DNA of 64,000 nt from Styela clava (Eukaryota), in the NCBI RefSeq assembly GCF_964204865.1, contig NC_135251.1:20150001-20214000 (forward strand), written 5' to 3'. Shown in pieces: positions 141 to 57,374 of the stretch (within the stretch, counting starts at the first letter, position 1; every line of letters starts with the position of its first letter). The position numbers and the translations under genes were made by a program. The notes beneath the pieces were generated by a model. The model did no database searches. It was given only the letters and a program-made list of their open reading frames with translations, and was not told the DNA's origin.

Positions 141-3100
141 ATAAAGAACAGAAGAAACATTGACCTAGTGTTTATAGGAGGAAGTACGCACAGTGGTACA
201 AGTTTGATTAGAGCAATGTTGGATTCTCACCAAGAAATTTATTGTGGATACGAAACATGGCTGATGAGAACTATATTAGGCGGATTGGAAAAGTGGAGAG
301 AGTGAGCGTCGTTATTTACTCTATGTGTCTGCGTATTTGATCACAAATTTACCTGTATCACTTGTTATTTTCAGATTTAATCAGAAGCACTTCTTGGTGA
401 ACGCTGGAGTCTACCCAGAGGCACTAGATGACGCAATTGCGCAATTCATGTTGGAAGTAATTCTCGGTCACTGTCCGACTTCTAAACTATGTTGCTACAA
501 GGACACGTATATCTTAACCTACGCAGAGTACGTATAAGTTTTATGCCTGTAAAGTGAGGAGCAACTGGGGGGCCCGTGGTCCCAAGGGAGACGCGGAGAA
601 GTTAGAGGGTGGCCACAATACTGGGAAAAGCAAAATTGATTTAATGCAATTTTGTTTGCATATTTTTCTTTCATAAGAATATTCCCCGTTTCCCTAGTTT
701 GATTACCTGATGAGATTATTTTGCAGGATGTTTTTATTTTATGGTATGAATTATTTGATCATAATGGGTTTTGAAATCAACAAATCAAAATAACATTATG
801 AAACCTTTTTGCTTCAGAAATTTCAACCTTTGTAGCTGGTTGGCAGACCCTCTGATCTGCAGATAACGGTCGAACCTAGTCAACTTGTAACTAGTGAACG
901 CCGAAAAATACATTAAAATTTCTAAGACACGTGAATGAGACACCATTTACCTTTAGGGTTGGCTTTCTCAAATAAATCCAGATGGCCTAGATGCCCTAAC
1001 TGGAATGTACGCAATGCGTGCATTGCTCCCATTTTTGTTAAAAGCCTTTGGAAGGGGGCCACGAGCCATAAAAGGTTGGGAATCACTGGTGTGCGGTCTA
1101 GAAAATATTATGGTCTGTATGCATTAGGAAAACTTTTAATATTCTTTTCGGGCAAGAGAAAAGTTTCAATCATTTCAACCAAGCTATTTATTGATTCATA
1201 AATATTTTATGTTTAGGTATATCCACAGATTGTTCAAAAATGCTAAATTCATTCACATGGTCAGAGATCCAAGAGCGGTCGTTTATTCAGAACTATCACA
1301 GAAAGATCCAAACAATGTCAATAATGTCACAAGTTATTGGTATGTACATACGCATCAAAAGAAAAAACGAGAATATCGGTCAGAGACCGAAGACTTATCG
1401 ATCGAAAATTAGGCGATCCCCCAAAACAGCGCTCTTACTCCATAGTGACACCTTGTGTCCCATCACTAATTAATTAATAACTCGCTAATTATACGACATA
1501 GATCATCTAAAATCAAAAGTCGTGAGATATCGCGTACATCTAACAGACAGACAGACAGACAAATAAATATCAACATACTTACCGATTAAAATCGATAAGT
1601 AATAATAAACAAAAGTAGAAAACCTGCGATTTTAATTTTGGTCAAAAGGGCTGGAGAGAAAACAAAAAGCACTGTCTTTCACATCTTGTCAAATGAATTG
1701 GTGAATATGCTCCAATTACTGTTAAATGTAGAATCCTTAATATCACGCGATGATTTGACTTCAAAGTCAATATCATGCAAAATACCTATGTTTTGTCAGA
1801 ATCTGGTGTTAGCATTACGATGTAAGCAAACTTATGAAAATATTTTCTTGGTTGTTCTCTACAATATATATATAAATAAATAATAAAATGCTTACTCAAG
1901 GAATGCAATCCTGGGATGAGCAAATGCAAGCAAAACATAGGGTACGACGTATATGAAACACTTTGTTTTGCGTATTTGAAAGTATGGCAAAACTAAATAA
2001 GTAGAACAAGTTCATGCATAATTACATATTATATTTATTTTTTCTTTATTATTTTCTTGATTTTATGATAATATTTTAACTCATCTTAACTTGCAGGATG
2101 AATTTTCAAAAATGGGATGAGGATAATTTAATAATATTGGACAAATGTGCGGATTTAGGGAAAAAATATTGTTTGTTAGTCAAATATGAACAATTGATAT
2201 TGAAACCCGTGGCGCAAACAAAACGAATATTCGAATTTCTTGGAATTCCATGGAGCGACGAAGTTTTACATCACGAAAGACATATCAACAAATCTTTAAT
2301 ATTAAGGTAAAAAATTGAAAATATAAATTAAAACTAGTTTTTTTTTGGCTAAAACAGTCATTTCAATCTCGCGTTGAGGTGAGTACGGTAAATATTTTCC
2401 TTGAATTGAATTTAGTAAATCCAGCGCAATGCAACAATAGATCTTATCTAAATTCATACCTTTACGACGTTAATCCTTATTCAATACACACTGTCTAATA
2501 GGATTGCCAGTGGTGGAACGGGTTCTCGTTTGCATCGAATTACCTAACAACGGGTTCCCTTATATCAGAAGATATATATATATGTGATTACTTATGCTAA
2601 ATTAACAAGACACGATTTAAATAAATCTAATACATGACTTTCGAAACGCCAAATATAACGTCGGTCTTCAGCTTCGGTGCACGTTGCTCAGTTGCTGCAG
2701 TCGCCGAACGTCTAAAAAAGAATGGGTTCGCAGATAGTTCGCACAAACCCTCTGATCGCCATCATTGAAAAAATTTAATTTAGGTACGCCCTGTCATCTT
2801 ATTAATACTTTTTTTATCATGAACAAAGGCATCGAAAAGGTCATACCTTTATTGAATTGTTTTAAATTTTTTTCCCTTAAGCAGGTTTCTTAGAAGAGGT
2901 ATAATCGGCACTGGTCATAAATCAAATTCATTGTTTATACAATTGATTGTTGTAAAGAATTGAATAACTTAATGGGCATGCTATTCTAGATCAGAAGAAT
3001 ATGTGAGTGAAGATTTATTCAAACCTTTACATTTGAATGGACTAAAGAGTTGGTTTGGGAATCTCCCGAAAGAAATTGAAGAAAATCTCGGACAGAATGG

Positions 3101-3197
3101 AATTGGTCAATTGGTGTATTTTGACTATGATCGAAAAGAGCATACTCCAAATTATGGCCGGCCTGATGAATTTATGATGAAAATGATAAATAAATAG
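141..3197 (+). CDS. TPST-like sulfotransferase, clade A copy 1 (5' partial; first TM-encoding exon lies upstream of the window)
   Basis: GT-AG exons 141-301, 375-527, 1217-1339, 2097-2306 and 2990-3197 splice in frame. Motifs: VFIGGSTHSGTSLIRAMLDSHQEIYCGYET (5'-PSB loop region), CCYKD, MVRDPRA (3'-PB), VKYEQLILKP...FLGIPWSDEVLHHE, KPLHLNGLKSW...PNYGRPD, all collinear with TPST1/2. Confidence 0.9.
1365..1602 (-). mobile_element. Helentron-associated non-autonomous element (DINE-1/HINE-like), internally deleted copy
   Basis: Same family as 35223-35515 and 51478-51789. Has a subterminal palindrome ACTTA(C)CGAT..ATCGATAAGT, a (CAGA)n microsatellite and a terminal stem-loop TCGGTCAGAGACCGA, and sits in an A/T run with no TSD. 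Absent from the equivalent intron of A2. Confidence 0.7.
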
Positions 3198-4762
3198 GAA
3201 TTATAGAAAAAACGATATTAAATGATTGCTTCCACCGCAAGTATTGATGAGTTTTTCTCGGAATTAGTCGAATTCTTTTGTGGGCATTGTCCAATTTCGT
3301 TGCATTTCGTGGTGAAAACTGTAAATTGCACCAAACCAACTAAAAAAAATTTGCATTATGTTACGTCATTGCTAAAATTACTAAACGAATAAAATTTAAT
3401 ATTGTAATATTTAATTTTCATTGGTTGATGAATGATAAATTTTGGTACAAGTGAATCAACGAACAATAAATATCGATAGTTGAATTATTTTCGTATATTT
3501 CCGAACGATTGATTATTCATCTAGCAAAATGTTGAATTCGATAGAGGCAAGGAAAGGGTTAATTTCCAATATATATTCTCTATATGGAAACGAACAGTTT
3601 TTACTCAATGTACATAAAAAACGATATTTGTTTGTTCAGCCATCAAATGGTACTCAGTACGATATTAGAGGGTAATTTTTGTCAGGATGAGAAATAAAAT
3701 ATGTAAGACTCAACAGCAGACAAGTATTTGAGAACGACGCATGTATTTTTGTTTGAAATTTTTTATGTATTTGTCACAGTATTGCAATAATTTAGAATTT
3801 TTTGTTATTGAAATAAATATTGGCTACTCAGAAACCATGCCCATGTAATCGACATAGAAAGTCTTTGTCTATTCAAGCTTATTTGTAGCATGCATGTATG
3901 TTTCAATGAAATCAGAATACCTGAGATAGCGTAGTACCAAATAAGCATAAGTGGACTTCATACGTGGAGAGATACTTGTGCTGCACCGTTCATTTTCATG
4001 CATCTGAATGTGCAAATTAATATTTAGGGCGCTAAAACAACTATATTGAAAGCAGTTAGTAAGGCAGTTGTTGGTTGATTGTAAGATATGAAAAAATAAC
4101 ATAAAAAACAGATTATCAAAAATTTAGCGACATGAATTTAAATGATCTACGGACTTCTAAGTCAGTCTAGGAGGCTTCACCGCTGTGTTTCAAAATATTT
4201 GAATGGCGATTTTTTCTATTCCAGTCTATGTGAGCGAGATATCAACAGAAATGAGAGTGGAAACCACGAAATCCCGATAAATTATGCCGAGTGTATCTGT
4301 TCGCAATAAACACAATAATATGCAATAATTACAAGCAGTTTTCAGTTATGACCGAAAATCTAGAGAACGAATATTATGTTGCCTGAGTTAGAAATATATT
4401 ATTATATAATTCTTATTTATCTTACCAAAGAAGGTAACTTTCTCTCTAACAGTAAAAAAAATATATATCATAGCTATCAATTTAATCACAAAAATATCAC
4501 GATTAAAAAAAATTGGCTCCATTTTGTAAAAATACTTCTAGCGTTTCAAACTGTTGGCGTCAGGAAGTTTATTCTGTTATTATTTCAAATTCTAAAGGTA
4601 CAGTTAGAGTTTAGATATATGTGTTATATATATACAACAATACTTTTTTTGTCGCAATAACTAAATATTTCTAAGCATTTCAGGGCTTCGGCAATAATAA
4701 TGATTAATATAGATTATTAATATGTTGCATTTCAGATCACTACTCTGTACGGAAAGCTGGGG

Positions 4763-7700
4763 ATGTTCAGAAGCGACCTAAAACAGTTATTCTTAATCTG
4801 TTTATGCGTGTGCTCCTCTGTGCTCTTTTATTATTTGTGTCGAACAATAAAGAAAAAGGATCCAGCGTTAGATATAAACGAAAGGGTAAAGTATTTGAAA
4901 AGTAATATATAATGTACAGGCTAATTGAATATTTCTACACTAGAAGACGACAGTATCCAAACATTGTAGAATTTATAGTTTTGCCACGAATCTGTACAAG
5001 TACCCAGTCTACATAAGATTAAACAAGATGCCAAATGGAAAGAAATGTACGACGAATATGAACAAAGCAATTTGAAATGTCACGGATAAAAGCATTTGTT
5101 TGGCGAAACCATTAGATTGAATAATTTTTAATCTCATTAGTAAACTCGTTGCTCCGCAGGCCTTACCGACCCATACGCGATGCGCTACCTTTGTATACAA
5201 TGTATACATTGCTCTCTTGTTTTAACGATCGTGAATTCCATTCCATCGAGATTCAGGACTAAAAATCGAAACTATTCCATTGGACTTATGAAATAAATTC
5301 AGACTGGCACAAACAATATAAATGAAATGAAACTGTTATTGGAACACAGATAGATCTTAAAAATTACCTGTGAGGGTTCTCTTAACGAATGTTTATATAG
5401 CAATTATTTCTTTAGATAAAAGACAGAAGAGACATTGACCTGGTGTTCATAGGAGGAAGTACGCACAGTGGTACAAGTTTGATTAGAGCAATGTTGGATT
5501 CTCATCAGGAAATTTATTGTGGATACGGAACATGGCTGATGAGAAATATCTTAGGCGGATTGAAAAATTGGAGAAAGTGAGCGTCGTTATTTTCTTTATG
5601 TGTCTGCATATCTAATCATGCATTCAACTATATCACTTGCTATTTTCAGATTTAATCGAAAGCAATTCTTGGTGAACGCTGGTGTGTACCCAGAAGCACT
5701 AGATGACGCAATCGCGCAATTCATGTTGGAAGTAATTCTCGGTCACTGTCCGACTTCTAAACTATGTTGCTACAAGGACAAGTATATCTTAACCCACGCA
5801 GAGTACGTATAAATTTTATAACTGTGAATAGTGTGGAGCAACCGGGGACCATGGTCATCAAAGAAAACCACAGAGCAGTTGGAAAATGGCCACACGACTA
5901 GGCGCAAAATTGATTTTAATGCAATTTCGTTTGCATATTCTTTCTTTATAAGAAGATGCCATGTCCTGCCCTGAGACGACAATACCTTTGGATCTACCCA
6001 AGTAATATCAGATGCCCTAGAATTCGGCCAATGCGTGCATTGCACCCCTCTTTTGAATGATTGACAGAGAAATCGTGAATGCTAAATGTATTCGGAAGGG
6101 TGCCACGAGTCATAAAAGTTGGAACCACTGGTGTGGAGTCTAAAATATATTATGACTTGGATACATTGAATACACTTTCAATGATATTAATATTCAGTTT
6201 GCTTGATCTTCGAGCAAGAAAAAGGTTTTAATCATTTTAAGCAAGCTATTTATTGATTTATATATTGAGTTCAGGTATATCCACAAATTGTTCAAAAATG
6301 CCAAATTCATTCACATGGTCAGAGATCCAAGAGCGGTCGTTTATTCAAGTCTATCACAGAATGATTCAAACAATGCCGCAAGTTATTGGTATGTACATAC
6401 GCATGTATCAGAAATTGGCGCTTCCGTAGTATGTGTATCAAAATGGCGCACAACCTGGTAATCCCAACCTGGTACCTATACTATGTTCAGGTTGTGCGCC
6501 ATCTTGGTACACATACTACGGGGAGTACCCAAAAAATCTACATAAAAGCAGGAAACCTGCTATTTTCGTTTTGATCAAAGAGCTGGAAAAGGCTGAAAAA
6601 TAAGTAGAAATTATCATGCATAACTACATATAATATTTTTATGTTCTTTTTTATTTTCTTGATTTTATGATATTATTTTAACTTATCTTAACTTGCAGGA
6701 TGAATTTTCGAAAATGGGATGAAGATAATATAATAATATTGAACAAATGTGAGGAATTAGGAAAAAAATATTGTTTGTTAGTTAAATATGAACAATTGAT
6801 ATTAAAACCCGTGACGCAAACAAAACGAATATTCAAATTTCTTGGAATTCCATGGAACGACGAAGTTTTGCATCACGAAAGACATATTAACAAATCTTTA
6901 ATATTAAGGTAAGAAAGTGAAAATACTAATTAAAACTTTTTGTTTGGTAAAACTGTCAATTCAATCTCACTGGTGAATATTCAACTTGAATTGAATTCAG
7001 TTAACCAGGCAACAATGAATCGGGTTCTTGTTCCAATGGAACTATACTAAAATAACAAGACATACCGTATTTGCTCGTTTTGTAGCCCGGGCCCTTTTTT
7101 TTCAACCAACTCGCTAACCGGGCCCTTATTCAAACCGGCCCTTATTCAAGCACGGGCGCTTGTTATTTTCGATCGTTACAATAATTAATATATTGTTATT
7201 TCCAGTTCTCAAGTATGGTTTAAACTAGAATACCGAAAATTTTGACTTTTTCTACGCACCGCAGGTACAATGCCGCAAAAGAAGAAAAGTTTTGCGACGC
7301 CCTATCAATATTGAAACGACGCACTTGGGCGTCGCGACGCCCAGTTTGAGAACCATGGTGTTACGTACTCAACGCTATCTGTTATGTACCTGGACGCCTA
7401 AGGCGTGAGTGTTATCTACCGGCGCTCAAAATTCAACAGCGTTGTGACAAAAGCGCTTCTTATTTCCTATTGTTCTCTACCAATGAAAAATCAGCTTTTA
7501 CATCGGGCGGGTATTCAAGCACCGGCCCTTATTTATTTTTATGTTCTGTTTACACGGGCGGCTATTCATGCGGGCCCTTAATGAAGATCGGGCGGTAAAA
7601 CGAGCATATACGGTAAATATAATAGCTAACTTTTGAAACGCCAATCACCAGCTGCGGTGCACGTTTCTCAATAGCTGCAGTCGCCAAACGTCTAAAAATG

Positions 7701-8200
7701 AAACCAGTTTGCTGATTATTACGACATTGCAACGGGGTTGCGTAACCCTCTTAATCCAACCACTGAAAATATTTGAATTCGGATACGCCCTGTTATCTTG
7801 TTAATGCCATTTTTATCATAAACAAAGGCATTTACAAGTTTATATATTTATTGCAATGTTTTAAATTTTTTCCCTGAGCGGGTGTCTTAGAAGTAAGTGG
7901 TATCAGCACAGGCCAAATGTATAAATATCACTCACTTTATGCAGTTGCCCTTAATACAGAATTTGGATAACTTAATGGGCATAATATTTTAGATCAGAAG
8001 AATATGTGAGTGAAGATTTATTCAAGCCTCTACATTTGAATGGACTAAAGAGTTGGTTCGGAAATCTCCCAAAAGAAATTGAAGAAAATCTCGGACACAA
8101 TGGAATTGGTCAATTGATGTATTTTGACTATAATCCAGAAGAGCATACCCCGATTTATGGCCGGCCTGATGAATTTATGATGAAAATGATAAATAAATAA
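4763..8200 (+). CDS. TPST-like sulfotransferase, clade A copy 2 (catalytic Glu replaced by Gly)
   Basis: Exons 4763-4885 (MFRSDLKQLFLICLCVCSSVLFYYLCRTIKKK, a type II signal-anchor), 5416-5576, 5650-5802, 6275-6388, 6699-6908 and 7993-8200. Open frame, highly similar to A1. Reads CGYGTW where A1 has CGYETW. Confidence 0.9.
7065..7613. mobile_element. pogo/Tigger-type MITE in intron 5 of A2
   Basis: TIRs CCGTATTTGCTCGTTTT / AAAACGAGCATATACGG flanked by TA on both sides. Absent from the homologous A1 intron. Confidence 0.75.
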
Positions 8201-8419: not shown

Positions 8420-9110
8420 TACTTCTATTTACGGTAGACGTAAAGGTTTGTTTATATCGAATGGGAAAGTAATGCTCATTTTATATTTAATAATCATACA
8501 AGAAAAAAGACTTTTCGTTGACTTGAGTCTTCCGATACGAGCTAACATGATTTGATTCACGTAAAAAGAAGTTTTAAACAAGCCCAGGAAAATTCCTATT
8601 TTTACATGACTAGTTTCGTTGTATTTCGTAATGAAATTTGTAAATTGCACCAAACCACCTAAAATATTTTTTCATTATATTACGTTATTGCTAAAATTAC
8701 TAAACGAATAAAAGTTCTATAATATTTAATTTTTATTGGATGATAAGTGATCAATTTTGTTACATGTGAATCAACGAACAATAAATATGAATAGTTGAAT
8801 TGTTTCCATATATTTGCGAACGATTATTCCTCTAGCAAAATGAAGGGAAAGAAGATAAGGGAGAATAACTATACCAAACTCATGTGTTTCCCCATAGTTA
8901 GGACTAGGAGACTTGTCTACTCGATTGCATCGTAAAACACTTCGTTTTGGTGCAATTTTAAGCATAGCTTTTTCTACATCTTCCGGAATATTAGCGAACG
9001 ATTGTACGAGTCCAGTAAATACACAGGGGTTTTGATACTCGCTTTGTGGATACTTCGGTTCTGTCAAGTTAGAGTAGGTTGAAATCATAACTTTTAATAG
9101 ACAAGCACTT
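8420..9110 (-). pseudogene. Inverted relic of a clade-B TPST-like gene (penultimate exon 8875-9060 plus 3' UTR/flank)
   Basis: The minus strand reads ...GLVQSFANIPEDVEKAMLKIAPKRSVLRCNRVDKSPSPNYGETHEF, frameshifted relative to B exon 6, with its ttgacag acceptor at 9061-9067. 8420-8840 is the reverse complement of B-gene 3' flank sequence. Confidence 0.8.
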
Positions 9111-41839: not shown

Positions 41840-42650
41840 CGTCACGCTAATAACCAAATAACAAAAGTCATTTTTGGCGATTTTGAGTTTTTTATAAAAT
41901 AGATATTTATGTAATACTGCGCACCTGTCTGTTAACTCAGATTTTATTTTAAGAATTCCAAAACCCATAAAAATGGAGATTTAGTATGACATGCACATTT
42001 GTGCAATTGTTTCGTCATAATCAATTATCATGGTTACTGCAGGACTATTGTGACGTCACAAAGGCAAAATAACCTCGGCGAAGTATTTTCTTGTTTTTGC
42101 ATCTCGGATTCTAGCTTAGCGCGTATTAATTTGAATTTATACTACTGTATAGGAAGGCGTGCACTGTCCGAGTCCAATTCTCCTTGGTTGGCTTTTATAT
42201 AGGGTGCATTGCTGTTTTATTCTTTATATTTAATCTTAGTCGTATTTCGGTGGGTGTGCAGAACGTGTTATATTATTGAAATATATATTTTTACAAACAT
42301 AAAAAATAATGTAATTGAAACTTATTAGCTATTTCGGGAATTAGACATTGTAGATACTGAAAATGACATTCGTTTTTGGAATGTTTAGTTTTCAGGACTG
42401 GTGCATATAGTAAAGTTGCAAAACTGCGTATGTCCCCAAGTCATAGACATATTTCTGCCTAAGTCACAGTGCGCCATCATGACGTCACTTAACTGCGTCA
42501 TACAAATTAACTTAAATCCGGCTACGATCAAAAAATTGAACCAGGGCAAATTATTGACTCTCAATGGCGTAACAATATCATTAGGAAGTTTTTTACGTTT
42601 TTCTCAAAACTGCTAAAAATGACTTACGCAATTCGGTTATTAGCGTGACG
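41840..42650 (+). mobile_element. About 800-bp TIR element with 4-bp TSD (Sola1-like non-autonomous), copy 1
   Basis: TIRs CGTCACGCTAATAACC / GGTTATTAGCGTGACG, with TSD ATAT on both sides. Confidence 0.8.
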
Positions 42651-43088
42651 ATATGTGCTTTTTGTGATTAAATTTGTTGAGAAACTGTGAATTTTATGAA
42701 TCGAAACCGTGGTCCTTGTCGGAAATCAGATATCCAGCAATAACAACAAACAGTGTTTAGCATTCTTACTAATCAATATTGTTAGGGATGTTGTAAATAT
42801 TTTTCTTGTGATTGGATTAACATAGCAAAATACTTTTTTAATTCAAATTACAATATAATTATACCTCATTTGAAGAAGCTAATAGTAATGTATCGATAAA
42901 TTCCGAAACGTTAGTGCAATTCGTAATGCAGTTCACCTATCTATAATACCTTTATTTCCGGGCTATCTAGCTAAATTCTCTACAGACCATCGACGGAATA
43001 TAATTTTGTCACGACTTCGTTTTTTCAGCTAATTAGAAAGACAAATAATAAAAACAATACTTATCAATGTTTTCAGGCCAGAACTGTG

Positions 43089-46000: not shown

Positions 46001-46176
46001 CTTTGAACTTGGATGGACTAACAAAATGGGTTGGGAATCTCCCGAAAGAAGTCGAAGAACAATTGAAAATTTATAATGAAATGAAACTTTTTGGTTATGA
46101 CCCAGAAAAGACTACTCCGAAGTATGACCAACCCGATGATTTTATGATGAAAATGATGGCTGAACAAAAATTATAA
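43089..46176 (+). CDS. TPST-like sulfotransferase, clade A copy 3 (most divergent A copy)
   Basis: Exons 43089-43229 (TM anchor), 44014-44174 (VFIGGSNHSGASLTRAILDSHQDIHCRCET), 44672-44824, 44902-45015 (MVRDPRA), 45545-45754 and 45966-46176. Internal exon sizes of 161/153/114/210 match A2, and the frame is open. Confidence 0.9.
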
Positions 46177-46223
46177 TCTTTGAATTGCACGGGATCAAAG
46201 TCCGTTGTTGAAATACATAACAT

Positions 46224-47013
46224 CGTCACGCTACTAACCGAATTGCGTAAGTCATTTTTAGCAGTTTTGAGAAAAACGTAAAAAACTTCCTAATGATATT
46301 GCTATGCCATTAAGAGTCAATAATTTGCCATAATTCAATTTTTTGATCGTAGCTGGATTTAAGTTAATTTGTATGACGCATCATGTGACGTCATAATGGC
46401 GCACTGTGACTTAGGCAGAAATGTGTCTATGACTCGGGGACATACGCAATTTTGCAACTTGACTATATGTACCAGTCCTGAAAACCAAACAATCCAAAAA
46501 CGAATGTAATTCTTAGTATATACGATGTCTAATCCCAAAATAGCTAATCTGTTTCAATTACATTATTTTTTTTGTTTAGAAATAGATATTTCATCAATAC
46601 AACACGCTCTGCACATTCACAGACTAAAGTTAAATTTAAAGAATAAAACAGCAATCTACCTTATATAAAAGCCAACCAAGGTGAACTGGACTCAGACAGT
46701 GAATATCACAAGTTCACGCCTTCCTATACTGTAGTATAAATTGAAATTTATAAGCGGTAAGCTAGAATTTAAGATGCAAATATCCTTCGCCGAGGTTATT
46801 TTGCCTTTGTGACGTCACAATAGTCCTGCGGTAGCGATGATGATAATTCATTATGACGAAACAATTGAACAAATTTGCATATCATACAAATACTCTATTT
46901 TTATGGGTTAAAATAAGTTAACAGACAGGTGCGCAGCATTACATAAATACCTATTTTATGAAACACTCAAAGCCGCCAAAAATGACTTACGCAATTCGGT
47001 TATTAGCGTGACG
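46224..47013 (-). mobile_element. About 800-bp TIR element with 4-bp TSD (Sola1-like), copy 2, inverted relative to copy 1
   Basis: Same TIRs as 41840-42650. The body is the reverse complement of copy 1. TSD ACAT on both sides. It begins 47 bp after the A3 stop codon. Confidence 0.8.
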
Positions 47014-47788
47014 ACATATTGTTCGACTTTAAGTAATATAAGACTCGCATCGAGTCGCATGAAAACGATGGCAAGTTGACACACAATGTATTGATTTGGG
47101 GGCCACCCAATGGTTATATGCTATCTAGATTAGAGCACAAAATTGTTTTAAAGCTCTTCGGACTGACGCACATTATTTCGCAATTTTATCAGGCCCCGCC
47201 TCTTATCAAGGAAAAGTTCTTATTTGTGAAACGTCAAGAGTACTTTCGAACAGGATGCTGCTTTTAAGTGAAAAACGACAGAACGGCAGACAGTTGAAAG
47301 TATACTTAGAAAACTCTCGACATGTTTCTGTCATTTATATAGGAACAAATTTGCCAGGCTATAAAATCATACTTGAAAGTGACTAAAAACATATATGTGC
47401 TTTATGTATAGCTCATATTGTCAGCTGGCGTATCACTTTTCACCTAATATTACAGCTGTTGGTAAAGTAGGATAATCTCAAACAGTGAGGGTATTCAACT
47501 GTACACGTATATTCTGAAATCCAAAGTAATGCATTTTGCAACACTCATTATAATAATCTAAACCACGTTACACAATCACTTGCAATATGTAAGAAATATG
47601 ATATATTATACCATGCACACAGATGTTTCCGGGTACCTCGGTGTTTAGAAACTAACGGGCGCCTATATGTGAATAATTTTAAAAATCTGATATATATATT
47701 AACTCTATAAATTGAAATATCGTCATGTAATATAAAAATACTCCTGTATAAATATCGCATCTCTCAAATTAAGAACTAAATTCCATAT

Positions 47789-50755
47789 CTAGTACAGACT
47801 TGGAAATTTTTTCATGCGAGTGCAGCCGGACAGATACAAAGAAACACCCGCCCACTGTTCGCCCATTTCTTTTATGAAATTCGTTATCTTCAGAATGGTT
47901 TCAGCCGAGGGATGTGGATCATGGGAAAATATAAATATGTAATGGTCATCTGTCAATGAAGAATAAAAGAACATCAAAAACAAATTAATTAAATTAATTG
48001 AAAAGAAAATGGAAATATAAAGACAAATGTCCAGCTTTATAACAGAATCACCAATGCGATAGTGTGGCTATAATTTTTACGGAAACCGTTTGTTTTAATT
48101 TCTGAGTAATCGTGATACATGGGAATTCTATTAAAAAGAGTTTAAAATGGGATTCTATGATTTGAATTCTCTTACAATTTCAATGTCACCAATAAAATGA
48201 GTCCCTCACCTTCTTCTCCACATAGTGGTATAATAATGAAAGAACTGTAATCAGAGTAGTATCTTTCCGGGTGTTCGTAATGAGAATCAACTTCTGTAAA
48301 AATCAAACTAAAATAATTATTGTCGATGTAAACAACGGAAAAAGATGTTTGTTTGCCTTACACATCAAGCGGGCAATACTTTTAGTTGGAGGTACAAATC
48401 AATCCGAATGGGAAATGTTGGCAGAAATTGCATTAAAAAGTCTTCGGAATTACATCGAAATAAATTAGGCAAGATCAACCGAATATGCTGAAATAATTCC
48501 AAGTATAAGGACGTTCCAATAAAAATCAAATTAGTTAATTTTTATCAATTGGATTTTTACAAGACTAACTACCGTCTTCTATGCTTTCACGTTGGTGGAT
48601 CCGTATATGCATATAATGCAAGGTTACTGTAGCAGAAGTGAAGATAACTATCCTAAGTGATTCAATAGTCTTACTGCACACTAACACAGATATACATACT
48701 TCAACTATGTATTTCTGAGGAAGTCTGACCTGACCGAGATCAGACGAAACGTTACCAAAATATATTTGTGTTAATGTGCAGCAAGACTATTGAATCAATT
48801 AATTAATTTTTAAAATAGGTAATTTAATTTTTTTTGAAAACACATCAATAAAATGGAACCTATCTATATTTACTGTTAGTTTAATTGCTCTATTCATTAC
48901 ACATTACAGTATATTTACGGTACCGACCTTTCTTGGCTTCTTGAGAGTTTTGTAAGTGGTGATTTTCCAAGTCTATGTCCATTTCACGCAAGAAAACCTT
49001 GTCTGAATCGAATGAAATATGACTGGTTGATATGACTTTGAAAAAGCAACACTTTGTTAGATTCAATACAAACGAGATTACTAAGAAGAAACGTTATGAA
49101 CAACAATTGGTACATTATTGGTTCCATAATCTTTGCACCCGTAAATGGCACCCAAGATATTTACACCTGTATACATTTGCACCCACGGACATTTGCACTC
49201 ATGTACAATTGCACTCGTACGTACATATGCTCTTGCAGATTTTAGCACCAAGTTACAGATTGCATTCATAGACATTTGCACCCACGGATATTTGCACCTA
49301 TAGACATTTTCACCCATGGATTTTCGCACCCACTAACTTTGCAACCACGGACCTTTGCATCCATACATTTCAACCCATAGATTTTAGGACCTGCATATAG
49401 ACTGCACCCGTGGGTGTATGCACATGGGTACAAATGGACGTATCTGGAAATTTACATGGATAAAAATGTACGTGAGTGCAAATGTCACAACGCCGTCACC
49501 GAATTATTGAACACAAATTGGACCTTTGGATCGTTTTGTTAATATGTTGTCAGAATTTTTCTTCTAATTATTGGAAAAAAATCGATTTTCTCTTTAACTA
49601 CTGGACCAACTGCATTGAAATTTTTAGTAATCAATTGTTGCTGTCGCCGGAAGGCTATTACTCTCATTTATTCCAAAATGTTATATGAATCTTATGAGAT
49701 CTGATATTTCATCCAAAATTCCCTGTAATATGTTTTATTCGTGGGAATACGGCTATTAATCCGCCAATCGTGACGGCTGTCTTGCGTTTTGATTTTGCAA
49801 AATCTTGCGACGTGAAAGTCAGAAGTTTCTCGATATCGGTGCACTGTAGGTATCTGATGCACATTGTAAAAGGTAAAGTACTGTAAATAATTTAATACTA
49901 CAGTTGTTAGTGGAATCTTTCGGCATTTTAATTGACGCTTGCACAAGACGCATGAATGAATCAGCATTGTCACAGAGCCTGGTAAAGCTAGCAAAGTACG
50001 GTTACCGGACGAGTACGTCACGATGGTCGACAATTTCAGCTTCGTCCAGGATATGGTGTTAGGGGAAATTGTGAGTAAAATATTTCGTTTTTGTTTTCGT
50101 GTCCATATATTTAAGAATTTTTCTCTTGTTAAGCGATTGAGGTTCGTTTCCGTTCAAACTGTGCTTTTAGTATACACCAAAGTAAATTAAACTCACCTTC
50201 GGTTCGATTACGGAAATATATATTTAATCCACGATGAAAGTAGTGAAATGGCATTTCATAATATTTTGTACTCTCACTAAAATGTATAAGATTTCACGAT
50301 AAACACGGTTATATTTATGTTTAATTCACTATTTTGAGGTAGATTTAACTTTTATAACCTTACCAAGAGCCATTAAGCAATTATAAATACATATCATGTG
50401 TCAATGTTTAAAATAGTAATTTTGAAAAAAAAAACATGCAAATATCTTACTTTTCTCGTATCGCGAAAAAACGGAATTTTCCACCAGATTTTGTTGATTC
50501 AAATTCACTCGCTATAAAGCAGGAGACAACGCGGTCTAAAACGTCGCCAGCATTCAAAATTTGATACCAAACCCCTGATATCTGAAAAAAAGCATCAATT
50601 TAAAATATATATAATTTTTTTGTGTATTTATAGCGCTTTAGAAACATTACCTTGTCCCAATCGAAGTCATTCACAGGTTCGGGTAATCTACATTGTTTTG
50701 TTTTCACCCCAATAATAGTCAAAGTAAGCAGAAGAAATATTGAAATATTTATCAT
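47789..50755 (-). CDS. Secreted lipocalin-like (ApoD-like) protein 1, 6 coding exons
   Basis: Minus-strand exons 50755-50651 (MINISIFLLLTLTIIGVKTKQCRLPEPVNDFDWDK), 50581-50451 (ISGVWYQILNAG), 50276-50197, 49002-48928, 48293-48210 (YYSDYSSFIIIPLC) and 47949-47789. All GT-AG and phase-compatible. Has a signal peptide, GxWY, an SDY (TDY-like) motif and 4 Cys. Confidence 0.82.
48658..48796 (+). repeat. Penelope-like terminal fragment: inverted repeat enclosing a hammerhead-ribozyme-like core
   Basis: About 37-bp inverted arms. The core reads CTGAGGA-A-GTCTGA..TCAGAC-GAAACGTT. Related copies are at about 26683-26757 (-) and about 18335-18400 (-). Confidence 0.55.
49119..49495. mobile_element. MITE with internal ~15-bp tandem repeats (related to 28454-28656)
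   Basis: Many GACATTTGCACCCAC/TG units on the left and inverted GGGTGCAAATGT-like units on the right. Located in lipocalin-1 intron 3. Confidence 0.65.
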
Positions 50756-51477
50756 TGTAATTCACCTATTAATATATATAATTTAACTAGAAAAACCTAT
50801 AAGTCGTTATGATAGAAATAGGTAATGATAACAGGGTGTTAGCACAGAAACCTGTTCCTTAACATAACATAAGTAACTAGAAGCAAAAGTTTTTAACCTG
50901 CGTGAGGGTACGATCTATTGATACACAAAGGGAAAATGATGACAATGATTGTTGAGGCATCTTCCCAAGCGCAATAAATACGCTTGACAACGCCCTGTTA
51001 CCCTGCGTAGATTATTAAGATTGTGGACCGATATGGATAATTATAAATTATGAACAAGAAGCTTATAATATTCCCCGGTGCTCGGCAAACCCGTTCTTGA
51101 AATGTCGTGATGATCAGAGAAGATCAGATCTTGTTTTTCAGAACTATGAGATATACATAGTTTTCGAAAATGAGGCAACCTGTTTTTTGAAACCTATCAG
51201 CTTTCATTCCAGGCCTACACAAGCAACGGTAATTGATCAAGACTTTCACTTCTCGGATAAATATGAAAAACTTACTTTATCTGATGCTGAATGCAAACAT
51301 TGTACAAGTATCGTGAGTGCAGTTTTGTATACACTTTAATTTACACTCAAATTTCACTGAAGGAGAAGGAATACTAAAAATCAACATAAATCAATTACGT
51401 AAATAGGCCTACCAACATAAGCGAGTGTCTGGAACCCAATACTTTTTGAAGAAAAGTCAAATCAAGTTACAATATAT

Positions 51478-51789
51478 AAACGAGAATATCGGTCGGAGGC
51501 CGAAGACTTATCGATCGAAACTGCGGTTTCGATCCATGACTCTATAGTGACACCGCGTGTCTCATCACTAATTAATTAATAACTCGCTAATTATACGGAA
51601 TAATTCCAATCCAATAATCATCCAAAATCAATAGGCTTCTGGTCCGAGATATGATGAATGCACATGCAAAATTTGGAGAAGATTCAACCACGCCTTCATG
51701 AGATATTGCGTGCATCTAACAGACAAACAGACAGACAAACAGACATACACCTATCAACATACTTACCGATCTAAAGATCGATAAGTAAC
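51478..51789 (-). mobile_element. Helentron-associated non-autonomous element (DINE-1/HINE-like)
   Basis: Full-length relative of 35223-35515, in the opposite orientation. Confidence 0.75.
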
Positions 51790-53193
51790 AACTAATCAAA
51801 TATTATTGTTCTGCAATAGCCTAAACGTTGTAATTAAATACCTCAGAAAACGCATTCTATTTGCCTTATGCATGAGCGCAAAGTGATCACCTTTCGCTAA
51901 TCATTTTACACTAATGTATACATATCACGAAATATACATATTCAATAAACATGATAATCTGGGCTAGTTTACAATCTAAAACACACATATATATATATGT
52001 ACTATATCGTACAAGCTTGCCCTACCTTCAAACTAACAAAAATCTCATAATGTTCTCATATTTCTTCCAAGCAGTTATTTATTCTTACACGTATAAGATT
52101 GATGAATGAAGTTTCACATTTCAAATATTGATCTCCTCAAATCCTTTGCTTCAGACTTCCTCACTGTGTAACGTATACATCCAGTCAACACAAAATAATC
52201 TGAGTAGGGATTTAAAAAAATATTTTTGACGTAGAAATTTTAAGTATCAGTATTAACCATAGCTTGTCAATCTTCAAATATTCAGAGTAAATAGGTGAGA
52301 TGAACGAGTGACCACTTTATGTGGGTGAGTATTCTTGCTCGTGAACATAGATTTTATTTGCACAATATTTCTAGGTATTTTGTATTGTAACGTTCCTCAG
52401 AATCAATTTCATGTCTTCTTCCGTTTTGGGACTTTGAAGTAAGCAAACCGTCCATCTAGAAAACACATTATCATGAAGCAAGCCAGTATAAGTATAATTT
52501 GTTAGGACAGAAATTTCAAATATAATTCATTTATTTATCAGAGCTAACTTAAGTGGCCAACTAGCCAATATGCTTTTATTCTAAATATTCGCATTCGAGA
52601 CGAATGTACATGACTATTGATATCGGATGTGTTTATAAATAAACAAAGGATAAAATTATGTGTAAAATATGCATAAATGTGTCAAAAATGCTGAGAACTA
52701 TTTAATACAAAATACAAGATTTTGAAAAACATAAACTATAAATATTTAGCTAGAGTGATTCTGATTTCATTGAAGTGTACATGATTGAAAATTATAATAC
52801 AGAAAACGATTATCCCCCTCACGTATGTAGCGATGTTGGTCATCATAGATATAAAAATGTTGGTAATCAAATTAGCCGACTTTTGACTGCAACTATAGCC
52901 GAGTGTAATCGTTAAGTTAGACACTAAGTCTAAACACAATAAACTTCCACTCAGTAATGCGTTTTTACTGCAGTCATCTTAACCGTTGTTTTAACGTCTC
53001 CAATGCAAGCAGACGTTACTATACGTGCTTAGGTACAACAGTTTCCTTCTCGTCTTATCAATTCCATTTTACAAAGCCCGAACTGATAGCAGGTTAGCGT
53101 AAACTGAGGGACTACTACTGGCAAGCATGATCATTCAGTTGTGAGACGTATTTATTTAATTTTGATTCGCGCAGTCAGACATTTATTCACATA

Positions 53194-55990
53194 ATGCTGT
53201 TTGTCATATTTTATGTATACTCGATGATTGTCACTACAGAAGCTTCTTTGGCCAAAACGGCTTTATGTAAACTTCCACAATCAGAAAAGGATTTCGATTG
53301 GGAGAAGGTAAGATTTGGATATAATATAAACATATGTGTTGTATATAATATAAACATATAAAAAATGAGCTTAAAATGCCGGTGACAAGAATTATGGTGA
53401 TATAGATGATGGTGATGAACTGATGATGATATATATTTATAGGGAGAATAATGTACCCAAGAGTCTATACAGCTAGTGTAGAGATTTATTCTCGTCAACA
53501 AAATTTATACGCTGTATATTTTTCTCCAGATTTTCCAATTGGAAATTTCCAATTCCAACTCTCCTCTTCGTATAGAAATTTGAGCCTCGTGTCAATCGCT
53601 ATCTACTGGCATCTCTTTCAAAAATATGAATCTACAATACATATATATATTTGTATATATTACCGTGCAATTATAGTGAAATGCAATTCTTTTGTTGGGA
53701 CTTTTCTATGAGCAAACGTATAAAAAGAACACAGTGAAAAACACGCACGAAAACCAGTGCTCTGGCCCACTGAGTCTAACTAAATTACAATTTTTTACAA
53801 CAAAACAATCACCTCAAATGTAAGATGAAAAACGCACTTTATAAAATGTGTATTGTTTTTTTTTATGTAATGAGTTTCATGTAACAATGTAATAAAATGA
53901 TGGCATATCATATGATGGCACATACAATTCGATAAAGATTCGCAAAACCTTAAAGTTTGCCGAAGAAAGTTGAATGTAAAAGAATAGTACAACTTATAGG
54001 AGCCATGTAGAATTTGGTATTTATTTGCAGCTATTGTGGGATTTCCGACGATAAGGCGCCAAGCCAATGTCTTGTATACAGACTACAAAATATTTTCTTT
54101 CGTTTTCTCTGAAGGTTCCGAAAGATAATTGGTATCAAATACTAAACGTTGGCGACATTCTTGATGAAGCAGTATCGTGTTTTGTCGCAAAGAATTTTCG
54201 AAAAACGGATTTTGGCGGGATATACGACTTCGTTGTGGACGTGGGGTGAGTGGATGTTGCTAATGTTTCAAAAATGGTCTAAAAAGATTATTTATTATCA
54301 AATAATATTTAAGAGGTAAAATAATTGCTGCGTAAATTGTTTTACTTTTTGTTGGAAACAAACAGAGATGCAAAACAACATACTGTTGAGTTTAAATTCC
54401 ACCGTGAGGGACTGAATCGATATATCCGGTATCGTGATGAAGGTAAGATGTTTGTTTTCATAAATTGCGCTTCGTGAAAGTGATCGTATAACAAATTGAC
54501 TGTGTAAATCGATTTTTTTACCCAGTAACAGCTTCTTTTTACAGAAAGCGCCTTCAATTCGTTACTTTCGTCGTTCAGTTTTTATTCTCATTTGGATATC
54601 CACAAGTGTGAAAAATTAAACATCCGATAACAAGGATTCGTTACTACGTCTAAAAAATCATTATTCGTTTCATTTAGACCAGTCATTTATTTATGATATG
54701 ACAAATGCTAGGAAACAGCATCATCTGGAAGATAAAAGCATGGATTCTGACGGTAGAGCATAAAAATATTCAAATCATATTCATATATATACGAAGGAAA
54801 ATACAATCTGATATATATCATTGTTGGCAGATTGCTAGTTTAGTTTTTTTGAAGCAGAATAAGTTATTCCTATTTGTCTTCCCCTGGAAGATATTATTGT
54901 TCACATAGACAAATTATCAGGCTTGTTCATGGGACATTATTACTGTCCCATCCCATCCTATGGGATTACCATTGGAATACAGTTTGATAAAAATTAATAA
55001 ATTCATGAAAATTTAGGTTTAGTGCCTGCAAAACAACAGAATCCATTGAATTTGTTAACTTTCAAATTCAGAAGTATTGTCTAACTATGACAATCAGTAT
55101 CATTCTATTTCTGACTCACTCTGCTTATTCAGCAAATTACCAATGTCCTACTCATCGACTGTTTATAATAATTCAATTAATCGGGGTAATTACTGCACCA
55201 TTTCCTCAATTTTTATGTAACATGCAAATCTGATGTACAGAGCTCTATAAAAAGTTCAATAAACCCCCTTTCTTCGGCCCGATCGCGAATGACGTTTCTG
55301 ACTCTCTGATTGTCTATAGTATATATACGAACTATGGTGTTCCCACGTTACCTTACCATCATGTCAAAATCGCGCCGGAAAGGACATAATGTTAATTTTG
55401 TTGACGCATAAAACATAATCCTATATGAAATTGTCCCATTTGTCGTGTGTGTCCCATGAGAAATAGAGACGTTTGCTGTCCCATCATAGCTCGTTTCTCC
55501 TATCATTCAAAGCTTATTGCTCAGTTATTCATGTTATTTGTAATTTCAAAAATTTCAAACTTATTTTTGAAAAACCTTGCTTTTCTTTATTTACAGCAAA
55601 TATCTACTATAAATTTCCACAAAGTTATTACTCAGATTATAAATCTTACATCATTGTACCACAATGCGGATTTAAAGGTAACAATTATTGTATCCTGCCT
55701 TCTTCATTTTATAATATCTCAAAACGATAAATCAAGTGATCGTTTACGCACTTTGAAATTAATAATATTATTCGAAATAAAGTTTAGTGTAAATGAACTT
55801 TTTGCCGAATTTGTTTTCAATTTCAGGAAAACATTTCCTGTGGGTGTTGACTAGAACACCAAGTCCATCTGCAACAGATTTGATCAAAATAACGAACGTC
55901 ATCGAAAAGATGGGAAATGAGTGGGCTGAAGTACCTTTATACATGTCAGGGTGTCCGGCGTTAGATGGTAACAACTACATGGATGTGTGA
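53194..55990 (+). CDS. Secreted lipocalin-like (ApoD-like) protein 2, 6 coding exons
   Basis: Exons 53194-53307 (MLFVIFYVYSMIVTTEASLAKTALCKLPQSEKDFDWEK), 54115-54245 (DNWYQILNVGD), 54366-54442, 54678-54752, 55597-55677 (YYSDYKSYIIVPQC) and 55827-55990 (LWVLTRTP...SGCP). Intron phases (0,2,1,1,1) are the same as lipocalin 1. Confidence 0.82.
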
Positions 55991-56657
55991 AATATTTGAA
56001 ACATTTTTTCTCTTGTTAATTTAAATAACACATTAATTTAAATGCATCTTATACGAATGGACATTTGTGGACTAAATTTGAATGTTGATAAAATCGAAGA
56101 TTAATTTACACTCCTGTCCAATTCCTATTCAGCTAATACAATTTATATAACGTGTACGTCTTTTATCAGAACATGTATTTGTTTGGGAAATGGGGAAAGA
56201 TATAATCTCGGCATGTGCCGGAACAGGATTCAAATCAATACGTAGTGGATTTTAAAAAATTATTTCTAGACGGAAGTGCACACAGTGCATGAAATTTTAA
56301 TTTACGATGTTAAAGAATAAGAATACATAATATATATATGGTTATGGCCTCCCATAATTATAACTATGGTCTGTGGCATTAAGGTTATCTATTTCATTAA
56401 TCGAAGTTTGTGCTGTCGAATTCACATTGCTTATTGTTGCATAATTTCCATCAACCAGGACAACCAGCACGATGAAATGATATGAATTTATGTCATATAT
56501 TACGGATAAATTATAAATCAATATGACATCTCTCCTTCTTGAGTGGAATCCGGTATTGATCAATTTTTCATCAACACATGTGCAAACAAAATTGCACGTT
56601 AGGCTTAATGTACGACGGTGATAGCTTTCGAAACGAGGCTTTACAACAGCTTTCAAA

Positions 56658-57317
56658 ATGAAGTCAGTATATATTACCCTGCTGATCTCAATTTCTGTGT
56701 CTCTTGTTAGTAGTCAGTTGCAATGTCGACTTCCAGAGAAAAAAATGTTGGTGGACTGGCAACGACTCAGTGGCGAGTGGTATGAGATTCTAAATGCTAA
56801 CGTCACGGTAGATGAATTAAGCAGCAATTGCTATGGGATGAAGGAAATACAACAAACCGAGCTGGGCGGAGTGTTAAAAGAAATCGACTATCATTTAAGT
56901 GAAAAAACCTACGACGTCATTACTGTTCGATATATATTGAATCGGAATAGTGGATATTATTGGATTGGCTCAGAAGCCGATTACAAATGGACATTGGAAT
57001 TTGGAACTGATGTGTCTGGCCGTTCACGTCAGATCGGAGAAGTTGCAAAAAAGATAGCAAAAACGTTATCTAAAAATCTTTTATACATCTTCACTGATTA
57101 TGATAATGTAATAATTTTTGCGAGTTGCCTCGAAGAAAGTATTGAAGGACAAAATAGAGGAATTTGGGCATACGGAAGAAGCACAAATACTACAGCGAAC
57201 GACGTCTTACATGTTGTGAACCAACTCGTTCACATGGGAGATGAATGGAGTGCAACACCCTTATTTAGGACGGGATGCGTAGGGACTGAACTGGCCGTGT
57301 ATTGCAAAAATAAATGA
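56658..57317 (+). CDS. Secreted lipocalin-like (ApoD-like) protein 3, intronless, 219 aa
   Basis: Signal peptide, CRLP..VDWQRLSGEWYEI (SCR1), FTDYDNVIIFASC (SCR2), IWAYGR (SCR3), and a C-terminus MGDEWSATPLFRTGC that matches the two spliced paralogues. Confidence 0.88.
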   Translation: MKSVYITLLISISVSLVSSQLQCRLPEKKMLVDWQRLSGEWYEILNANVTVDELSSNCYGMKEIQQTELGGVLKEIDYHLSEKTYDVITVRYILNRNSGYYWIGSEADYKWTLEFGTDVSGRSRQIGEVAKKIAKTLSKNLLYIFTDYDNVIIFASCLEESIEGQNRGIWAYGRSTNTTANDVLHVVNQLVHMGDEWSATPLFRTGCVGTELAVYCKNK

Positions 57318-57374
57318 AAAGTAATCATTACGGACTTCGAGCGACCACTGACCACCAGCACGCAACCATCGTTA

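What the first reader, a model, noticed from the sequence alone, without database searches (positions are those of the whole stretch)
141..57317. Expanded, re-engineered TPST-like sulfotransferase array abutting a divergent lipocalin triplet: candidate sulfation-plus-carrier locus
Seen: six intact Golgi-type TPST-fold genes in two clades. The last ends about 1.6 kb from the first of three secreted lipocalin genes, with no other gene between them. Known: most animals have only one or two well-conserved TPST genes, lipocalins carry small hydrophobic ligands, and some marine invertebrates use sulfated small molecules and glycans (for example the sulfated sterol sperm attractant and sulfated tunic polysaccharides of ascidians). 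Inference: these paralogues have altered their peptide-recognition residues, so they may sulfate non-canonical substrates in the secretory pathway, and the neighbouring lipocalins may be carriers for the products or substrates themselves (lipocalins 1 and 2 are Tyr-rich). Adjacency alone does not prove coupling.
Basis: partly seen in the sequence, partly recalled or inferred. Interest (0 to 1): 0.8.

Follow-up and report, generated by a model that had tools for sequence, protein, structure and literature searches.

The report
Sea-squirt TPST gene array beside lipocalins
The sea squirt Styela clava has multiplied its tyrosine-sulfating Golgi enzyme gene into a tandem array whose copies have altered active sites, but the lipocalin genes next to it look like chance neighbours from a very large family, not partners in one pathway.

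Summary
The window (Styela clava, C2:20.15-20.21 Mb) carries six intact, co-oriented TPST-like genes in two clades. A seventh lies just past the window end, and the genome has 11 such loci in all.

All share the same intron positions and an N-terminal signal-anchor exon. Within-cluster dN/dS is 0.23-0.31. In an ML tree the ten divergent copies form one clade, sister to a single canonical TPST on contig C16.
- **Clade A** keeps the catalytic R78/E99/K158/S285 but has lost the peptide-contact residues R101, R105 and T198.
- **Clade B** has R78H and S285A/V, and lacks the substrate strand. It has no relative above 41% identity outside S. clava.

Three lipocalin-like genes follow the array, and a fold prediction matches ApoD.

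The "sulfation-plus-carrier" reading is not supported.
- The junction exists only beside g6, and beside g7 through a recent ~30-kb segmental duplication.
- None of the other TPST loci has a lipocalin neighbour.
- The lipocalin family has at least 190 exon matches genome-wide.
- g6 and lipocalin 1 are tail-to-tail.
- Their transcripts do not always occur in the same runs.

RefSeq already names these genes "TPST-like". Earlier scan notes cover lipocalin arrays and other sulfotransferase arrays elsewhere in this genome, but none mentions TPST.

The parts
141..3197 (+). TPST-like g1 (clade B), exons e1-e5: 141-301, 375-527, 1217-1339, 2097-2306, 2990-3194 plus stop. Its signal-anchor exon lies upstream of the window (L007, window-equivalent -495..-340). 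RefSeq XP_039259446 (P0272), 336 aa.
4736..8200 (+). TPST-like g2 (clade B): e0 4736-4885, e1 5416-5576, e2 5650-5802, e3 6275-6388, e4 6699-6908, e5 7993-8197 plus stop. The catalytic Glu99 equivalent is Gly (CGYGTW). The RefSeq model XP_077976174 (P0153) reads e0 in another frame.
8840..9028 (-). Relic of a TPST last exon (clade-A-like, 48% identity), inverted orientation.
12331..15270 (+). TPST-like g3 (clade A): e0 12331-12459, e1 12864-13024, e2 13479-13634, e3 13920-14042, e4 14344-14553 (GC donor), e5 14747-~14936, e6 15235-15267 plus stop. RefSeq P0277, 334 aa.
17643..17783 (-). Second inverted relic of a TPST last exon.
20889..24698 (+). TPST-like g4 (clade A): e0 20889-21017, e1 22357-22517, e2 22904-23059, e3 23315-23437, e4 23731-23940 (AA|GCAAGT donor), e5 24148-~24337, e6 24663-24695 plus stop. 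RefSeq P0276, 334 aa.
28886..29092 (-). Third inverted relic of a TPST last exon.
34696..38046 (+). TPST-like g5 (clade A): e0 34696-34824, e1 35696-35856, e2 36230-36385, e3 36643-36765, e4 37067-37276, e5 37482-~37671, e6 38011-38043 plus stop.
41297..64000 (.). First copy of a ~30-kb tandem segmental duplication (92-97% identical to window-equivalent 71820-~100500). It carries g6 plus lip1, lip2 and lip3. The second copy carries g7 plus lip1', lip2' and lip3'.
43107..46176 (+). TPST-like g6 (clade B): e0 43107-43229, e1 44014-44174, e2 44672-44824, e3 44902-45015, e4 45545-45754, e5 45966-46173 plus stop. RefSeq XP_039259451 (P0270), 329 aa. Spliced transcripts were seen.
47789..50755 (-). 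Lipocalin-like lip1, six exons: 50755-50651, 50581-50451, 50276-50197, 49002-48928, 48293-48210, 47949-47792 plus stop. 211 aa, with a signal peptide and the NDFDWDK..G-x-W-Y motif. Convergent with g6.
53194..55990 (+). Lipocalin-like lip2, multi-exon. The exons found by similarity to lip1 are 53194-~53310, ~54118-54246, ~55590-55670 and ~55800-55987. The middle exons were not resolved.
56658..57317 (+). Lipocalin-like lip3, intronless, 219 aa. RefSeq LOC144432039 'uncharacterized'. The AF2 model matches ApoD and other lipocalins.

Best explanation
This is a lineage-specific birth-and-death tandem array of Golgi type-II TPST paralogues. Seven genes span about 76 kb on C2, and the genome has 11 TPST-like loci. 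They arose by DNA-level duplication from the single canonical ascidian TPST (C16a). Shown: identical intron positions in all ten loci modelled exon by exon, intact reading frames, N-terminal signal anchors, purifying selection, transcription of g6/g7, and monophyly of the divergent copies next to the canonical S. clava gene. Inferred: clade A (g3-g5 plus a dispersed C4 copy) are active PAPS-dependent sulfotransferases. They keep R78/E99/K158/S285 and both PAPS motifs, but their acceptor cleft no longer has the residues that canonical TPSTs use to hold acidic peptides (R101, R105, T198-A200), so they should prefer different protein or peptide acceptors in the secretory pathway. Clade B (g1, g2, g6, g7) sits on a very long branch. 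It keeps the 3'-PB motif, K158 and (except g2) E99, but has R78H and S285A/V and lacks the substrate beta-strand. I take it for a still-functional PAPS-binding protein with a remodelled acceptor pocket (about 0.5). The alternative is a catalytically weak or dead partner subunit (about 0.3). The three lipocalin-like genes are ordinary members of the very large S. clava lipocalin families. They happen to lie next to g6 and were copied along with it by a recent ~30-kb segmental duplication. No evidence links their function to the sulfotransferases.
For: PF13469 hits define the array and three other loci. tblastn and splice-site modelling give conserved exon structure with offset-0 acceptors and donors in 10 loci. 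Signal-anchor exons were found. RefSeq proteins match the models. Alignments to solved TPSTs run end to end: E 6e-92 for clade A and E 1e-63 for clade B. The site table is, and the catalytic role of R78/E99/K158 is from PMC10951654. dN/dS is 0.23-0.31, and dS is 0.076 for g6/g7, ~0.2 for g1/g2 and g3-5, and ~0.7-0.8 between sub-clades. In the ML tree the 10 divergent copies form one clade (UFB 98 / aLRT 95). It is sister to C16a (93/91) and lies inside the tunicates (99/96). The best non-Styela hit to clade B is at most 41% identical, against 63-64% within Styela. The clade-A profile score drops from 331-345 bits (Styela only) to 269 bits or less. g6 splice joints were seen in two runs. For the lipocalins: the fold, the family size, the segmental duplication, no lipocalin match near the C4 or C16 TPST loci, and lip1 joints in runs without g6 contigs.
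Against: Enzyme activity, topology and substrates are untested. Clade B lacks two residues whose loss cripples human and tick TPST, so it may be inactive. The long clade-B branch could distort its position in the tree. Protein databases hold few stolidobranch ascidians, so 'Styela-specific' may really mean 'Styelidae-specific'. The expression evidence comes from assembled contigs, which show presence only, not level or absence. Under a naive random-placement estimate a lipocalin gene within 2 kb of one of four TPST loci is unlikely, so adjacency by chance is assumed, not proven.
Confidence: 0.72

Rival explanations
1. One reading: the divergent TPSTs sulfate non-canonical substrates, and the adjacent lipocalins carry those products or are themselves the sulfated substrates. 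Linkage would be kept because the genes work together.
For: The two gene types lie 1.6 kb apart. The whole g6-lip1-lip2-lip3 block was retained as a unit in a tandem duplicate. lip1 has Tyr residues in acidic contexts (exon peptides). g6 and lip1 transcripts both occur in run X1.
Against: Only 2 of the 11 TPST-like loci abut lipocalins, and they do so through one duplication event. The genes are convergent. lip3 belongs to a different, intronless subfamily and is 42% identical to an unlinked gene on C5, against 25-29% to lip1. Tyr-richness is family-wide. lip1 joints occur in X5 and X6, where no g6 contig was found. The segmental duplicate is young (dS 0.076), so its retention says little.
Confidence: 0.1
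2. Clade B genes (g1, g2, g6, g7) are catalytically dead pseudoenzymes. They would be PAPS-binding or dimerising partners that modulate active TPSTs, not sulfotransferases in their own right.
For: R78 is His, S285 is Ala or Val, the T198-A200 strand is replaced, and g2 also has E99G. Ala mutants of R78/E99/K158 lose most of their activity in human and tick TPST (PMC10951654). dN/dS of about 0.26 shows the proteins are still constrained. That TPSTs work as dimers is from my own knowledge of the TPST2 structure and was not tested here.
Against: E99, K158, R183, S191 and the G-x-x-H-S-G loop survive a stem branch of about 2 substitutions per site. That fits a working active site better than a scaffold. 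His could replace Arg as a cationic or proton-donating group in the acidic Golgi (inference).
Confidence: 0.3
3. The extra copies are decaying duplicates (unprocessed pseudogenes) with no function.
For: Three inverted last-exon relics show that copies do die in this array. g2 has lost E99, and its RefSeq model is irregular.
Against: All seven copies have open frames across 6-7 exons with intact splice sites. dN/dS is 0.23-0.31 in every pair, including g1/g2. Correctly spliced g6 transcripts were found, with a second exon-5 variant (six differences) beside them.
Confidence: 0.05

Closest known systems
Human TPST1/TPST2 and tick TPST (PDB 5wri, 3ap1, 8w5z)
   Same: The sulfotransferase domain aligns end to end (E 1e-59 to 6e-92). 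The proteins share the type-II N-terminal anchor and the 3'-PB motif. Clade A keeps all four catalytic residues.
   Different: Both clades replace the acceptor-binding residues R101, R105 and T198-A200. Clade B also has R78H, S285A/V and a shortened polar loop in place of the substrate-pairing strand. The gene is present in 11 copies instead of one or two.
Canonical ascidian TPST (S. clava C16a = XP 'TPST 2-like' P0279; Halocynthia roretzi Q86R90; Ciona, Phallusia and Clavelina TPST)
   Same: It is the direct ancestor-like relative. Intron positions are identical, and it is sister to the divergent copies in the tree.
   Different: C16a keeps every canonical site, has long introns (about 11 kb in all) and lies alone on another chromosome. 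The array genes are compact, tandem and fast-evolving.
Apolipoprotein D / insect bilin-binding-type lipocalins
   Same: The lip3 model matches ApoD best (2hzq, E 2.6e-6, TM 0.52/0.65), and all top 50 hits are lipocalins. lip1 and lip3 share the N-terminal 'DW..L.G.WYEI' (G-x-W) motif, a signal peptide and flanking Cys residues.
   Different: Pfam PF00061 scores below its cut-off (17.8 against 23 bits). The model has two extra helices at residues 105-137. lip3 is intronless and belongs to a family of more than 100 loci in this genome.
S. clava lipocalin arrays noted earlier in this scan (s1-819797, s1-825803)
   Same: lip1 and lip2 have the same six-exon secreted lipocalin gene type, and the family is likewise expanded on a large scale.
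   Different: Here there are only two six-exon genes plus one intronless gene, next to an unrelated enzyme array.

Membership tests
Tyrosylprotein sulfotransferase (TPST; Pfam PF13469) | Sulfotransferase domain homologous over its whole length to solved TPSTs | tested here: met
   PF13469 hits over the cut-off on the exons. P0276 (clade A) scores E 6e-92 and P0270 (clade B) E 1e-63 against 8w5z, 5wri and 3ap1.
Tyrosylprotein sulfotransferase (TPST; Pfam PF13469) | Type-II topology: short N-terminal tail plus one signal-anchor helix | tested here: met
   A separate 5' exon with a hydrophobic stretch of 17 aa or more is present in all seven genes (g6). It is also present in the RefSeq proteins. 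This rests on sequence only; localisation was not tested.
Tyrosylprotein sulfotransferase (TPST; Pfam PF13469) | PAPS-binding motifs: 5'-PSB (G-x-P-R-S-G-T-T) and 3'-PB (R183...S191) | tested here: inconclusive
   Clade A has GGMHRSGTT plus RDGR..HS, so both are met. Clade B has GGST/NHSGT/AS plus RDPR..Y/HS. Its 3'-PB is kept and its 5'-PSB is altered.
Tyrosylprotein sulfotransferase (TPST; Pfam PF13469) | Catalytic residues R78, E99, K158, S285 (TPST2 numbering) | tested here: not met
   Met in clade A, C4, C16a and C16b. Not met in clade B: R78H and S285A/V in all four genes, and E99G in g2 (roles of R78/E99/K158 from PMC10951654). Clade B is therefore filed as a TPST-fold homologue, not as a TPST.
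Tyrosylprotein sulfotransferase (TPST; Pfam PF13469) | Acceptor-peptide contacts R101, R105 and the T198-A200 strand | tested here: not met
   Only C16a keeps them. Clade A has A/V101, D/N105 and K/Q/E198. Clade B has W101 and T/N/Y105, and the strand is replaced (g3 residue 105 is read as D because of a merge artefact in the alignment row).
Tyrosylprotein sulfotransferase (TPST; Pfam PF13469) | Tyrosine O-sulfation of proteins with PAPS | not testable with these tools
   This needs an enzyme assay.
Lipocalin | Eight-stranded antiparallel beta-barrel with a C-terminal helix | tested here: met
   lip3 AF2 model with a 12-sequence alignment: pLDDT 74.3, pTM 0.74. All top 50 Foldseek PDB hits are lipocalins, with ApoD first. 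lip1 and lip2 were not folded because spliced models were not joined.
Lipocalin | Sequence-family threshold (Pfam PF00061 / PF08212) | tested here: not met
   PF00061 gives E 0.0039 and 17.8 bits against a cut-off of 23. PF08212 gives 12.8 bits on the last exon of lip2.
Lipocalin | SCR1 G-x-W motif and secretion signal | tested here: met
   Read directly from the sequences: lip1 ISGVWYQI, lip2 WYQILN, lip3 LSGEWYEI, with hydrophobic N-termini.
Functionally coupled gene cluster (enzyme plus carrier) | Linkage repeated at independent paralogous loci | tested here: not met
   No lipocalin-like match lies near the TPST loci at C4:4.62 Mb or C16:7.33 and 8.88 Mb; the nearest C16 match is about 300 kb away. 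The second junction (g7-lip1') comes from one segmental duplication.
Functionally coupled gene cluster (enzyme plus carrier) | Co-expression | tested here: inconclusive
   g6 joints were seen in X1 and X2 only. lip1 joints were seen in X5, X6 and partly X1. These are contigs, so they show presence only.
Functionally coupled gene cluster (enzyme plus carrier) | Conserved synteny in related species | not testable with these tools

The most novel reading that the evidence does not exclude
Clade B (g1, g2, g6, g7) may be a new kind of Golgi sulfotransferase built on the TPST fold. In this reading His replaces the catalytic Arg and the peptide-pairing strand is gone. It would therefore act on something other than acidic tyrosine peptides, for example catechol/DOPA peptides, phenolic small molecules or glycans typical of ascidian blood cells and tunic. 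Clade A would then provide a set of TPSTs with shifted peptide specificity.
Probability: 0.25. Interest if true: 0.65.

Novelty: new variant of a known kind. Interest (0 to 1): 0.38.

Why it matters
Tyrosine sulfation is normally carried out by one or two highly conserved enzymes per animal. An 11-gene repertoire is unusual, especially with one clade that keeps catalysis but changes the acceptor cleft and another that rewires the catalytic site while staying under selection. It offers a natural experiment on how TPST specificity and mechanism can change, and a lead to lineage-specific sulfated products in ascidians. It also shows that gene adjacency in a genome full of expanded families is weak evidence of a shared pathway.

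Tried and rejected
- **Clade-A C-terminal membrane helix: rejected.** Exon 5 stays open for about 20 hydrophobic codons after PDEFVKEK. RefSeq models and a conserved last exon with a canonical acceptor (IEKEKKNNITS) show that this stretch is intron read-through.
- **Downstream GT donor (+27 nt) for clade-A exon 4: rejected.** RefSeq uses the GC donor at the position homologous to the other loci (DFSK|AEAS).
- **Single-sequence AF2 of lip3.** It gave pLDDT 41 and was useless. PDB sequence search with lip3 found nothing. The word search found only lip3 itself.
- **Handling of spliced models.** Exons were searched one by one or as separate rows of an alignment (A1, A3), and full-length comparisons used database proteins. 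For the tree, the exon fragments of six genes were placed in a common alignment locally. One small overlap artefact arose in the g3 row.
- **Exclusions.** No contig was taken for human, and the window has no N runs.
Full report
**Identity of the DNA.** The window has 34% G+C, no N runs and short ORFs broken by introns. The 219-aa ORF at 56658-57317 is 100% identical to RefSeq LOC144432039 "uncharacterized protein [Styela clava]". The window is C2:20150001-20214000 of a 377-Mb assembly.

**The sulfotransferase genes.**
- A six-frame search of the whole genome with Pfam PF13469 found exon-sized hits at six places in the window. It also found one place 10 kb past the window end and three other loci: C4:4.62 Mb, C16:7.33 Mb and C16:8.88 Mb.
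- tblastn with the ORF pieces of one gene per clade mapped five homologous exons in each unit. It also found three inverted relics of the last exon, at 8840-9028, 17643-17783 and 28886-29092.
- I set exon borders on g4 and g6 by reading the DNA and projected them onto all loci.
- In 10 loci the homologous acceptor and donor sit at offset 0 in nearly every case, with the same phases and no in-frame stop.
- Each gene has a further 5' exon with a Met and a hydrophobic stretch, the type-II signal anchor. For g1 this exon lies 340-495 bp upstream of the window.
- Clade A has a short seventh coding exon (IEKEKKNNITS) and a GC donor after exon 4.
- RefSeq already annotates the genes as "protein-tyrosine sulfotransferase-like / 1-like / A-like". 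My g1 and g6 models match those proteins at 278/278 and 275/275 aligned residues.
- An eleventh locus (P0004, C16:8883987-8888016) lies next to C16b.

**Expression.** Of 13 public runs that hold part of 43000-52999, eight look like RNA but are kept only as assembled contigs. I laid four of them on 44850-50849.
- The g6 joints 45015|45545 and 45754|45966 appeared in X1 and X2. A loose end matching the end of exon 2 appeared in the same runs.
- Two sequence variants of exon 5 were present in X1 and X2, one identical to g6 and one with six differences.
- Minus-strand joints defined six lip1 exons in X5 and X6, and partly in X1.
- No g6 contig was found in X5 or X6.
- Contigs show presence only.

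**Relationships.**
- A profile of exon 4 searched against 1.84 billion cluster representatives gave 545 clusters at E <= 0.001. Only one scored below 1e-30, and that was the g7 protein itself.
- With the full g7 protein, only S. clava proteins exceed 60% identity. The next hits are ordinary TPSTs of all animals at 34-41%.
- A profile of clade-A exons, entered as separate rows, scored 331-345 bits on three S. clava proteins. It then fell to 269 bits or less for the canonical S. clava, Ciona, Halocynthia and Phallusia TPSTs.
- In an ML tree (LG+C20, 30 rows, 326 columns) the ten divergent S. clava copies form one clade (UFB 98 / SH-aLRT 95).
- That clade is sister to S. clava C16a (93/91). It lies inside a tunicate clade with Clavelina (99/96), which is sister to vertebrate TPST1+2 (94/89).
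- The clade-B stem is 2.0 substitutions per site and the clade-A stem is 0.58.

**Selection and age.** Nei-Gojobori counts were summed exon by exon.

| Comparison | dS |
|---|---|
| g6/g7 | 0.076 |
| g1/g2 | 0.20 |
| g3/g4/g5 | 0.19-0.23 |
| clade A vs C4 | ~0.7 |
| g1 vs g6 | ~0.8 |

dN/dS is 0.23-0.31 for every within-cluster pair. These are constrained coding genes produced by repeated duplication.

**Active-site reading.** Columns were taken from the alignment with human TPST1 and are numbered as in TPST2. The numbering is mine, checked against motif identities. The roles of R78, E99 and K158 come from PMC10951654.
- C16a keeps every site.
- Clade A and C4 keep R78, E99, K158, S285, R183 and S191. 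They have H77, A/V101, D/N105, K/Q/E198 and W/S/Y200.
- Clade B has H78, W101 and T/N/Y105, and an Asn-rich loop (three residues shorter except in g1) in place of the 198-200 strand. It has Y-V or D-A in place of R284-S285, and g2 has G99.
- Clade B still keeps K158, R183, S191 and, in three of its four genes, E99.
- Both clades align end to end with solved TPSTs.

**The lipocalins.**
- lip3 scores below the Pfam cut-off and has no PDB sequence match.
- With an alignment of 11 intronless paralogues from other chromosomes, AF2 gave pLDDT 74 and pTM 0.74.
- Foldseek then returned only lipocalins, with ApoD first.
- lip1 (six exons, 211 aa) and lip2 carry the same N-terminal G-x-W motif. They belong to the six-exon type.
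- lip3 is 25-29% identical to lip1 but 42% identical to an unlinked gene on C5.

**Does adjacency mean anything?**
- lip3-type sequences give 142 matches, and lip1-type last exons give 53, spread over most chromosomes.
- None lies near the C4 or C16 TPST loci.
- Inside the array, only g6 has lipocalin neighbours.
- A self-comparison shows that window 41297-64000 is repeated at 71820-~100500 with 92-97% identity. It carries g7 and a second lip1-lip2-lip3 set. The second junction is therefore a copy, not an independent event.
- g6 and lip1 are convergent, separated by a repeat whose inverted partner lies upstream of g6.
- The Tyr content of the linked lipocalins (5.7-5.9%) falls within the range of unlinked paralogues (4.1-8.4%).

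**Verdict.** What is there is a lineage-specific TPST expansion with two kinds of active-site remodelling, already auto-annotated but not described in the literature I could search. The proposed sulfation-plus-carrier coupling has no support beyond one duplicated junction.

Noticed in passing
L022-L029, L031 (e.g. G000:C17:12770000-12771050, C16:15653900-15654950, C9:6162950-6164000): An intronless lipocalin-like ORF occurs in many copies on different chromosomes. The copies are 96-98% identical over the whole 1-kb stretch fetched, flanks included. It looks like cargo of a recently active repeat or transposable element.
   Followed up: partly
window 29090-31777: Two 843-bp direct repeats are 99.5% identical and lie 1.85 kb apart. 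They flank minus-strand ORFs with a retroviral-type aspartyl protease motif (PF13650, 24.2 bits). This is a small, young LTR-retroelement remnant between g4 and g5. I only observed it.
   Followed up: partly
window 41839-42652 and 46222-47014: Inverted copies of an ~800-bp repeat (84.6% identity) bracket g6. The downstream copy fills most of the g6-lip1 spacer and has very high contig depth in all four RNA-like runs.
   Followed up: no
window 63743-64000 onward (window-equivalent 63743-67970 and 67791-71821, L001): A ~4-kb tandem duplication (96-99% identical) lies between the two copies of the 30-kb segmental duplication.
   Followed up: no
window 23938-23945, 14551-14558, 37274-37281: In the three clade-A genes the conserved exon-4 donor is GC (AA|GCAAGT), where the other loci have GT. 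The RefSeq models splice there.
   Followed up: yes
G000:C16:8875392-8888016 (L004 and beyond): Two further divergent TPST-like genes (C16b on the minus strand, C16c = XP_039253145 on the plus strand) sit head to head about 6 kb apart. Both have H at the R101 position.
   Followed up: partly
window 4736-4885: The g2 signal-anchor exon is open in two frames. RefSeq XP_077976174 uses the frame not homologous to g1, with a donor 4 nt downstream, and also skips 7 residues of exon 2. The model may be wrong, or g2 may be spliced differently.
   Followed up: partly
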